The position numbers and the translations under genes were made by a program. A stretch of 63,275 bases of DNA, the filler included, from Octopus bimaculoides (taxonomy: Eukaryota): assembly GCF_001194135.2 (NCBI RefSeq). It is 5 parts of 5 records of this genome, joined end to end, with 100 filler letters (N's around TTAATTAATTAA, not from the genome) between each part and the next. Parts side by side here need not be neighbours in the genome. Positions count along the whole stretch, not along the records: positions 31,155 to 52,940 come from NC_069005.1; 4 more parts are not named here. One strand, written 5' to 3'. Below, piece after piece: positions 38,898 to 39,312 of the stretch. Within the stretch, counting starts at the first letter, position 1. Each line of letters begins with the position of its first letter. The notes beneath the pieces are model-generated. The model saw nothing but the letters and a program-made list of their open reading frames with translations. It made no database searches and was not told the DNA's origin.

Positions 38898-39029
38898 TTA
38901 CATTATTTACATTTGACGGATATTTGTCCTCATCTTGCTTGCTGTTAACAAAACGTTTCGGCTGATATACCCTCCAGCCTTCATCAGGTGACTTGGGAAA
39001 ATTTCGAACCTGGGTTCTCATTCCTAAGG
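38898..39029 (-). repeat. inverted partial copy of the SINE-D tail
   Basis: Reverse complement of about 39163-39281; abuts the SINE-D head. Confidence 0.9.
38946..38992 (-). ncRNA. type I hammerhead-ribozyme-like motif in the SINE-D tail
   Basis: CAC-CTGATGA-A-GGCTG[GAGGGTATAT]CAGCC-GAAAC-GTT; core and stem II intact, helix I weakened in this copy. Confidence 0.6.
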
Positions 39030-39312
39030 CATGTGCCCACAGGCATATGGCGTAGTGGTTAAGAGCGGGAGCTACTAACCTCAAGATTCCGAGTTCGATT
39101 TCAGATAATGACCTGAATAATAATAGTAATAATAATAATAATAACAACAACATCGAAAAATACCTTAGGATTGAGAACCCAGGTTCCAAATTTCCCCAAG
39201 ACACCTGATGAAGGCAAGAGAGTACATCAGCCGAAACGTTCTATCAACAAGCAAGATGAGGACAAATATCCGTCAAATGTACATAATTCCTCATCTCTTA
39301 GATACAGAACTG
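39030..39312 (+). mobile_element. SINE-D, second copy
   Basis: TGGCGTAGTGG A box, GAGTTCGATT B box, (AAT)n, GACACCTGATGAAGGC...GCCGAAACGTT, terminal AGATGAGG/CCTCATCT stem. Confidence 0.85.

What the first reader, a model, noticed from the sequence alone, without database searches (positions are those of the whole stretch)
38898..39312. Independent second SINE-D insertion repeats the same inverted-arm architecture
Seen: full element on plus (39030-39312) preceded by an inverted tail arm (38898-39029). The arm starts at a different point from the 19932 arm (at CCTTAGG rather than in the ribozyme core) but ends at the same place (...AAATAATGTA), again omitting the last ~30 nt. The omitted part contains CCTCATCT, which pairs with the upstream AGATGAGG (39254-39261 / 39289-39296) to form a terminal stem. 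The copy is on a different scaffold piece from the first. Inference: a variable start with a fixed end points to a replication mechanism rather than chance or an assembly error, and the terminal stem may be the RT recognition signal.
Basis: partly seen in the sequence, partly recalled or inferred. Interest (0 to 1): 0.75.

Follow-up and report, generated by a model that had tools for sequence, protein, structure and literature searches.

The report
Penelope-type insertion scar on a SINE
A short non-coding mobile element lies next to an upside-down partial copy of its own tail, which is the known insertion signature of Penelope-like retrotransposons, so it was most likely copied in by that machinery; the structure is real but the mechanism is not new.

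Summary
A 281-nt element (39033-39313, +) has tRNA-like A and B boxes, an (AAT)n stretch and a hammerhead core. An inverted copy of its 3' part (38901-39032) sits directly upstream and lacks the last 26 nt. So this is one insertion event, not two insertions and not an assembly error (the arms differ at 17 of 132 columns).

[quoted passage not shown] In vitro, a PLE protein nicks and extends both target strands and starts reverse transcription at two sites inside a stem-loop.

I reproduced the signature in four unrelated families that carry the same ribozyme core, using 120 metagenome contigs. Each family has two fixed 3' ends 30-40 nt apart. All 21 unique inverted pairs are head-to-head, and 20 of them carry exactly one tail. 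TSDs are 10-16 bp.

The AGATGAGGA/TCCTCATCT stem is real, and the tail-less end falls at its loop/stem boundary. Its role is not tested. No other copy of this SINE was reachable.

The parts
38889..38900 (.). Left copy of the target-site duplication, AAGGGGTGATTA
   Evidence: D4; 32 of 100,000 shuffles give an 11/12 or better repeat in this position
38901..39032 (-). Inverted, 5'-truncated, tail-less copy of the element's 3' part. It equals positions 39160-39287 of the full copy. Its outer end is the 'short' 3' end.
38952..38987 (-). Minimal hammerhead core of the arm: CTGATGA-A-GGCTG...CAGCC-GAAACGTT, with a 5-bp helix II
39030..39033 (.). Junction between the arm and the 5' end of the full copy. 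It lies in the 4-nt palindrome CATG, and 2-3 nt can be assigned to either side (microhomology).
   Evidence: the comparator L012 junction lies in GATC
39033..39313 (+). Full-length non-autonomous element (SINE): tRNA-like head, (AAT)n linker, PLE-type 3' module
39048..39058 (+). A-box-like motif TGGCGTAGTGG (pol III internal promoter)
   Evidence: 0.03 expected by chance; aligns with the heads of two other SINEs in the piece
39091..39101 (+). B-box-like motif GAGTTCGATTT
39116..39152 (+). (AAT)n/(AAC)n microsatellite linker between head and 3' module
   Evidence: D2
39205..39240 (+). Minimal hammerhead core CTGATGA-A-GGC...GCC-GAAACGTT. The predicted cleavage site is after 39240. Helix II is reduced to 3 bp in this copy, and helix I is weak.
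   Evidence: the same core sits in PLE context in the comparators
39238..39310 (+). Terminal hairpin. The core stem is 39254-39262 / 39288-39296. The loop (39263-39287) ends at the tail-less 3' end.
   Evidence: (z = -2.96)
39288..39313 (+). 26-nt 'tail', TCCTCATCTCTTAGATACAGAACTGT, present only on the direct copy. Its first 9 nt form the 3' strand of the stem.
   Evidence: tails of 30-40 nt at one end only in the comparators
39314..39325 (.). Right copy of the target-site duplication, AAAGGGTGATTA
   Evidence: (D4)

Best explanation
The 413 bp between the two copies of AARGGGTGATTA are the product of one retrotransposition event, carried out by the enzyme of a Penelope-like element (PLE: reverse transcriptase plus GIY-YIG endonuclease) on the RNA of a non-autonomous SINE.

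The SINE combines two modules. The first is a tRNA-like pol III head. The second is a PLE-type 3' module: a minimal hammerhead core, then a hairpin, then a 26-nt tail.

Proposed steps:
1. The enzyme nicks both target strands 12 bp apart.
2. Both 3'-OH ends prime reverse transcription, which starts inside the RNA at one of two fixed sites bracketing the tail. These sites are the loop/stem boundary of the hairpin (39287/39288) and the base of the hairpin (39313).
3. The bottom-strand cDNA started at the distal site and ran to the 5' end of the SINE RNA, giving the direct copy with its tail.
4. The top-strand cDNA started at the proximal site and stopped after about 130 nt, giving the inverted, tail-less arm.
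5. The two cDNA ends were joined at a short palindrome (CATG), and repair filled in the TSD.

Shown: the anatomy, the single TSD, the fixed two-end signature, and 'one tail per inverted pair' in four other families with the same ribozyme core.

Inferred: the identity of the enzyme, priming on both strands at this locus, and the role of the hairpin.
For: 1. The composite is bracketed by one 12-bp TSD (chance 3e-4). TSD divergence (1 of 12) matches arm divergence (17 of 132), so both parts have the same age.

2. The anatomy matches published PLE features. These are an inverted 5'-truncated copy adjacent to the 5' end, and a 30-40-bp tail at one end only (PMC8557442; PMC8969392). A purified PLE protein nicks and extends both strands, RT starts internally at two adjacent sites in a stem-loop, and the tail is the sequence between them (PMC11167929).

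3. The core CTGATGA-A-GGC..GCC-GAAACGTT has the 'min-HHR' layout of PLEs: an unpaired nucleotide before helix II and no helix III, with ACGU as a dimer palindrome (PMC4209133). The exact motif retrieved more than 120 animal-host contigs. In these, the helix I 3' strand follows GAAACGTT directly. One of them (L014) carries an RT + GIY-YIG ORF on the same strand, about 1.5 kb upstream of the motif.

4. Four unrelated families in those contigs each have two discrete 3' ends 30-40 nt apart (58 short, 43 long).

5. All 24 inverted pairs (21 unique) are head-to-head with their 3' ends outward, and 23 of 24 (20 of 21) combine one long and one short end. Sixteen have 10-16-bp TSDs. Arm inner ends vary: arms of 20-280 nt, spacers of 0-599 nt. 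L024 (TSD GTCACAATGAA) and L012 (TSD TGGTCATGGATA) are exact analogues of this locus.

6. The short end lies in the loop of a hairpin whose 3' strand is the start of the tail. This holds here (z = -2.96) and in the MFE folds of families A-D.
Against: No PLE ORF lies in the 21.8-kb piece, and the source genome could not be identified or searched. The autonomous partner is therefore unknown.

Beyond the 36-nt ribozyme core the SINE has no sequence similarity to any comparator. That core was also my search pattern, so its match is by construction.

Only one locus of this family was available. The tail is 26 nt, slightly shorter than the published 30-40.

Helix I of the hammerhead forms only 3 of 5 pairs in either copy, and Rfam hammerhead models give no hit. 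They also miss the comparators' min-HHRs.

The comparator hairpins are not thermodynamically significant on their own.

The head is not recognised as a tRNA by ARAGORN or Rfam.
Confidence: 0.8

Rival explanations
1. Two independent insertions of the same SINE family in opposite orientation. An older, 5'-truncated copy sits on the minus strand, and a later full-length copy landed exactly at its 5' edge.
For: The arms are only 87-88% identical, as two copies of different age or subfamily could be. SINEs are dense in this piece.
Against: There is one TSD around the whole composite and none around either part alone. The second insertion would have to hit the exact boundary without making its own TSD. 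A free-standing copy lacking its last 26 nt still needs the two-start-site mechanism. In the comparators all 24 inverted pairs are head-to-head and none is tail-to-tail, and 23 of 24 carry exactly one tail. Random co-insertion would not do this.
Confidence: 0.07
2. LINE-mediated 'twin priming' (L1-type): the second nicked strand primes internally on the same RNA, giving an inversion.
For: It has the same general geometry, with an inverted 5' segment, a direct 3' segment and a single TSD (established knowledge of L1 twin priming). Other SINEs in the piece end in A-runs, as LINE-dependent SINEs do.
Against: Twin priming splits one RNA into adjacent, essentially non-overlapping inverted and direct parts. 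Here the arm duplicates 128 nt that are also present in the direct copy. There is no poly(A) or simple-repeat 3' end. The arm starts at a fixed internal site next to a hairpin. The element carries a PLE-type min-HHR.
Confidence: 0.05
3. Fold-back (snap-back) synthesis within PLE-type TPRT: a single cDNA folds back on itself and copies itself, rather than the second target strand priming on RNA.
For: Many comparator composites have very short spacers between the arms (0, 10, 12, 15, 33-89 nt), as hairpin self-priming would give.
Against: Simple fold-back predicts that the tail always sits on the longer, forward copy. Among comparators where the spacer could be assigned, the tail is on the longer copy in L108, L001 and L071 and on the shorter arm in L023, L002 and L022. 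In vitro both strands are extended from RNA (PMC11167929). The model gives no reason why return synthesis should stop exactly at the short site.
Confidence: 0.06
4. Assembly artefact, or a DNA transposon (MITE) with terminal inverted repeats.
For: This is a short-read-type assembly with N gaps, one only about 480 bp away (37879-38420). The structure has 130-nt inverted repeats with a TSD.
Against: The arms differ at 17 of 132 columns, including an indel, so they are not a collapsed or chimeric read. The right inverted-repeat end is 26 nt inside the TSD, so the termini are asymmetric, unlike TIR elements. The interior carries a pol III head and the arms carry a ribozyme core.
Confidence: 0.02

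Closest known systems
Insertion architecture of endonuclease-positive Penelope-like elements (Penelope/Poseidon, Neptune, Nematis, Naiad; Evgen'ev & Arkhipova 2005; Craig et al. 2021, PMC8557442; Frangieh et al. 2024, PMC11167929)
   Same: An inverted 5'-truncated copy abuts the 5' end. A short tail is present at only one end. There are two fixed 3' termini, and a single TSD surrounds the whole unit. A minimal hammerhead lies shortly upstream of the 3' terminus, and RT start sites lie in a stem-loop.
   Different: There is no ORF and no direct pseudo-LTR or tandem copy. The 5' part is a tRNA-like pol III head. The tail is 26 nt rather than 30-40. There is no sequence similarity to any PLE outside the ribozyme core.
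Sm-alpha / Sj-alpha SINE-like elements of schistosomes (pol III promoter plus hammerhead; summarised in PMC6765202 and PMC4209133)
   Same: A short non-coding retroposon with pol III boxes and a type I hammerhead motif, suspected to depend on PLEs.
   Different: Those carry a canonical type I hammerhead with loop-loop contacts, and the ribozyme frees monomers from tandem multimers. Here the ribozyme is the minimal PLE variant, sits in the 3' module, and the element is dispersed, not tandem.
Metazoan non-LTR retrozymes (Cervera & de la Pena 2020, PMC7229834; bioRxiv 10.64898/2026.07.22.740005)
   Same: Non-autonomous, hammerhead-bearing, and proposed to be mobilised by PLEs.
   Different: Retrozymes are tandem 170-400-bp repeats with canonical hammerheads that give circular RNAs. 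This locus is a single copy with a pol III head, and there is no tandem array in the piece.
L1 twin priming (from established knowledge of LINE-1 inversions)
   Same: The second nicked target strand is used as a primer, giving an inverted 5' segment inside one TSD.
   Different: L1 inversions partition one RNA. Here the inverted arm repeats sequence also present in the direct copy, and it starts at a fixed internal site.

Membership tests
PLE-type insertion (product of a Penelope-like RT/GIY-YIG enzyme) | Inverted 5'-truncated copy immediately adjacent to the 5' end of the direct copy | tested here: met
   38901-39032 (-) abuts 39033-39313 (+)
PLE-type insertion (product of a Penelope-like RT/GIY-YIG enzyme) | Short 3' extension ('tail', 30-40 bp) present at only one end of the insertion unit | tested here: met
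   A 26-nt tail, 39288-39313, is on the direct copy only. It is slightly shorter than the published range. Comparators: 20 of 21 unique pairs have exactly one tail.
PLE-type insertion (product of a Penelope-like RT/GIY-YIG enzyme) | One target-site duplication around the whole complex unit | tested here: met
   A 12-bp TSD with one mismatch. Comparators have 10-16 bp.
PLE-type insertion (product of a Penelope-like RT/GIY-YIG enzyme) | Minimal type I hammerhead (CUGAUGA, helix II, GAAAC, no helix III, short helix I) near the 3' end | tested here: inconclusive
   The core and helix II are present in both arms. Helix I forms only 3 of 5 pairs. Rfam gives no hit, but it also misses the bona fide comparators. 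Cleavage was not tested.
PLE-type insertion (product of a Penelope-like RT/GIY-YIG enzyme) | 3' module shared with an autonomous PLE (RT + GIY-YIG) of the same genome | not testable with these tools
RT + GIY-YIG next to the same core was seen only in another organism (L014).
PLE-type insertion (product of a Penelope-like RT/GIY-YIG enzyme) | Direct pseudo-LTR / partial tandem copy | tested here: not met
   No direct repeat of the element at this locus. This feature is optional in published descriptions.
SINE (tRNA-derived, pol III) | Internal pol III promoter (A and B boxes) in a tRNA-derived head | tested here: inconclusive
   A-box TGGCGTAGTGG and B-box GAGTTCGATTT lie 43 nt apart. The head aligns with two other SINE heads in the piece. 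ARAGORN and Rfam tRNA models give no hit.
SINE (tRNA-derived, pol III) | Short, non-coding, dispersed, multi-copy | tested here: inconclusive
   281 nt with no meaningful ORF. Only this composite is in the accessible piece, so copy number in the genome is not testable.
Metazoan non-LTR retrozyme | Tandem repeats each carrying a canonical type I hammerhead with helix III and loop contacts | tested here: not met
   No tandem copy, a minimal core only, and no Rfam Hammerhead_1 hit.
L1-type twin priming | Inverted and direct segments are adjacent, essentially non-overlapping parts of one RNA, with a poly(A) 3' end | tested here: not met
   128 nt are present in both segments, and there is no A-rich 3' end.

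The most novel reading that the evidence does not exclude
There are two parts.

(a) The two reverse-transcription start sites that bracket the tail are divided between the two nicked target strands within one integration complex. This would explain why inverted composites carry exactly one tail (20 of 21 unique comparator pairs, plus this locus) and why the tail can sit on either copy. It goes beyond the in vitro report, which saw no strand difference in start-site use.

(b) tRNA-headed, pol III-driven SINEs that borrowed the PLE 3' module account for part of the thousands of 'dispersed minimal hammerheads' so far read as truncated PLEs. They would provide a natural template of about 110 nt that defines the minimal PLE recognition signal.
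Probability: 0.3. Interest if true: 0.6.

Novelty: new member of a known kind. Interest (0 to 1): 0.4.

Why it matters
The integration mechanism of Penelope-like elements is still only partly understood. A 281-nt SINE that shows the full PLE scar (inverted arm, single tail, one TSD) would be a compact natural substrate for it. It narrows the required cis-signal to the roughly 110 nt from the ribozyme core to the tail.

It also suggests that some dispersed minimal hammerheads in animal genomes belong to pol III SINEs rather than to dead PLEs.

For annotation, such composites should be called as one insertion. They form long hairpins that mimic miRNA precursors and can break short-read assemblies.

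Tried and rejected
- Rfam scan of the locus: no hammerhead or tRNA hit. The result is uninformative, because the same models miss the min-HHRs in bona fide PLE comparators.
- ARAGORN: no tRNA.
- Search for more copies of this SINE, all negative: the 21.8-kb piece; the protein database with the ORF across the junction; the protein database with a concatenate of all open frames of this and two neighbouring SINEs; exact-product look-ups; viral contigs. The prokaryotic genome scan gave only 16 hits to an 18-mer, all in bacterial or archaeal genome records, which I took to be chance matches. The organism therefore stayed unidentified, and neither covariation of the stem nor an arm-end census was possible for this family.
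- PLE ORF in the piece by tblastn: none.
- An apparent excess of conservation in the last 45 nt of the arm, tested as a sign of selection on the hairpin: not significant (Fisher p = 0.42). Dropped.
- Thermodynamic significance of the comparator hairpins: z between -1.8 and +1.3. Only their common layout is used as evidence, not their energy.
- Rejected readings: a MITE with TIRs, an assembly artefact, L1 twin priming, and two independent insertions (see the rivals).

Full report
**1. What is there**

Positions 39033-39313 (+) hold a 281-nt non-coding element. Its parts are:
- a tRNA-like head: A-box TGGCGTAGTGG at 39048-39058 and B-box GAGTTCGATTT at 39091-39101;
- an (AAT)n/(AAC)n linker at 39116-39152;
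- a 3' module containing CTGATGA (39205-39211) ... GAAACGTT (39233-39240).

The head aligns with the heads of two other SINE copies in the same piece, at 43415-43505 (-) and 50805-50895 (+). ARAGORN and Rfam do not call it a tRNA.

Directly upstream, 38902-39032 is the reverse complement of 39160-39287. This rests on the repeat finder I1+I2 and on blastn (131 nt, 87.8%, E 3e-43). A global alignment gives 115 of 132 identical columns with one 3-nt indel.

The arm stops at ...AATAAT, so it lacks the last 26 nt of the direct copy (39288-39313).

**2. One event, not two**

A direct repeat of 11/12 or better that abuts the arm end and lies within 73 nt of the homology end arose in 32 of 100,000 shuffles.

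Neither part has a duplication of its own. One mismatch in 12 nt of TSD fits the 13% divergence between the arms, so both parts have the same age. That divergence also excludes a chimeric or collapsed assembly.

The junction between arm and head lies in the palindrome CATG (39030-39033).

**3. The stem**

AGATGAGGA (39254-39262) pairs with TCCTCATCT (39288-39296). With outer pairs this forms a hairpin spanning 39238-39310 (-16.5 kcal/mol, z = -2.96, 1 of 200 shuffles folds as well).

The 3' strand of the stem is the first 9 nt of the tail. The tail-less end (39287) is the last loop nucleotide.

**4. What it corresponds to**

The literature describes this combination for Penelope-like elements (PLEs).
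- Insertions are 5'-truncated. [quoted passage not shown] - A purified PLE protein nicks and extends both target strands. It starts reverse transcription inside the RNA, in a stem-loop, at two adjacent sites. [quoted passage not shown]
- PLE pseudo-LTRs carry minimal type I hammerheads without helix III. Pairs of such motifs 100-700 bp apart on opposite strands were already noted (PMC4209133).

The core here, CUGAUGA-A-GGC..GCC-GAAACGUU, has that layout.

**5. Independent check with data**

No further copy of this SINE was reachable, so I scanned metagenome contigs for the exact core CTGATGAAGGC-N8-20-GCCGAAACGTT. This returned more than 120 contigs, nearly all apparently animal (host) DNA; one (L037) is GC-rich and densely coding and looks bacterial.

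They share only the core with the SINE. In them, the 3' strand of helix I follows GAAACGTT directly, for example TACCA|CTGATGA...GAAACGTT|TGGTA. One contig (L014) carries an RT + GIY-YIG ORF on the same strand, about 1.5 kb upstream of the motif.

The contigs fall into four unrelated families, and each has exactly two 3' termini:
- Family A: ...CAATCATG | AATCAACCACCTGGTTACAGGACCATTTTTAAAA
- Family B: ...CCCCAATCA | TGTCTACACCTAGCCACACAGAGATTTTCAAAG
- Family C: ...GAACCCTGAG | TGATGCAACCCAGCCGGACAAGCTTCTTCA
- Family D: ...GAGTAATT | AATATAGTTTTCGTGTCAACCTGATGAAACTTTTCACAG

Overall there are 58 short and 43 long ends.

Twenty-four loci (21 unique) hold an inverted pair:
- All are head-to-head with their 3' ends outward, and none is tail-to-tail.
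- The composites span 175-978 bp.
- 23 of 24 (20 of 21 unique) combine one long and one short end. About 49% would be expected if the ends were independent.
- 16 have a 10-16-bp TSD at the boundaries.
- The inner ends of the arms vary (arms of 20-280 nt, spacers of 0-599 nt).

L024 has the TSD GTCACAATGAA, a short inverted arm and a tail on the direct copy. L012 has the TSD TGGTCATGGATA, with the tail on the inverted arm and the junction in GATC. Both are exact analogues of the locus under study.

So 'variable start, fixed end, last ~30 nt missing from one arm' is a general, mechanism-derived signature of elements with this ribozyme core.

**6. The hairpin across families**

In the MFE folds of families A-D, as in the SINE, the short end lies in the loop of a hairpin whose 3' strand is the start of the tail. 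The stems are AACCAG/CTGGTT, TGGCTAG/CTAGCCA, GGTTGG/CCAGCC and GGTTG/CAACC.

The stem sequences are unrelated, which is suggestive. Only the SINE hairpin is thermodynamically significant, and no within-family covariation test was done. The idea that the stem positions the RT is plausible and agrees with the in vitro work, but it is not shown.

**7. Mechanism proposed**

The proposed steps are:
1. A PLE enzyme nicks both strands 12 bp apart.
2. The bottom-strand 3'-OH primes at the distal site (39313) and copies the whole pol III transcript.
3. The top-strand 3'-OH primes at the proximal site (39287) and stops after about 130 nt.
4. The two cDNA 3' ends pair through CATG and are completed.

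Internal initiation suits a pol III transcript, whose 3' end is undefined. There is no T-run in the + strand of the element or just after it.

The rule of one tail per composite suggests that the two start sites are shared out between the two strands in one complex. This is my inference.

A fold-back variant would explain the many short spacers. However, it predicts that the tail always sits on the longer copy. Where the spacer could be assigned, the tail is on the longer copy in three comparators and on the shorter arm in three.

**8. Weak points**

- No PLE ORF lies in the piece, the genome is unidentified, and the partner is therefore unknown.
- Similarity to PLEs is limited to the core that I searched with.
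- Hammerhead helix I forms only 3 of 5 pairs in either copy, at different positions, so the ribozyme may be decayed. Rfam finds nothing, but it also misses the comparators.
- The tail is 26 nt.
- In the library I could search, I found no paper describing a tRNA-headed SINE with a PLE 3' module. The closest are the Sm-alpha/Sj-alpha SINE-like elements and the non-LTR retrozymes. That search is not exhaustive.

**9. Verdict**

This is a real feature and was correctly sensed to be mechanistic. It is an instance of a known signature on a probably undescribed non-autonomous element: a new member of a known kind, of moderate interest.

Noticed in passing
window 43220-43510 (-) and about 50805-51100 (+): Two further SINE copies with tRNA-like heads that align with the head at 39033-39115. 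The first ends in an A-run, as LINE-dependent SINEs do. The same type of head therefore seems to be combined with different 3' modules in this genome.
   Followed up: partly
window 31155-52940 (e.g. 45700-47100, 49200-50100): The piece is extremely rich in (TG)n, (TA)n and (CT)n microsatellites. These produce more than 200 spurious sub-threshold miRNA hits in Rfam and most of the long 'ORFs'. N gaps lie at 35667-35795, 37879-38420, 47178-47358, 49952-49961 and 50467-50736.
   Followed up: no
L012 2696-2777; L029 3228-3329: Inverted PLE composites with short spacers fold into long hairpins and score as miRNA precursors (mir-1784, mir-1677, mir-722; E down to 8.5e-06, all below gathering score). 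This is a likely source of false miRNA annotations in animal genomes.
   Followed up: no
L001-L120: In four min-HHR families, inverted composites carry exactly one tail (20 of 21 unique). The tail sits on the longer copy in L108, L001 and L071 and on the shorter arm in L023, L002 and L022. Spacers are often very short (0-90 nt). The first two points constrain models of PLE integration.
   Followed up: partly
window 39030-39033; L012 2733-2738: The arm/direct-copy junctions lie in 4-nt palindromes (CATG here, GATC in L012). This is what is expected if two antisense cDNA 3' ends pair with each other.
   Followed up: partly
window 38952-38987 versus 39205-39240: The arm keeps a 5-bp helix II (GGCTG/CAGCC), whereas the full copy has only 3 bp (GGC/GCC, TG>AA). 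The two copies keep different subsets of the potential helix I pairs, so an ancestor with a 4-bp helix I is conceivable.
   Followed up: no
L024 4469-5395 (-): A retroviral-type integrase-like ORF (…DNGPPFSSKEFEGFL…WPQSNREVER…) lies just downstream of the PLE composite in this comparator contig, presumably from an unrelated LTR retrotransposon. I recognised it by eye and did not scan it.
   Followed up: no
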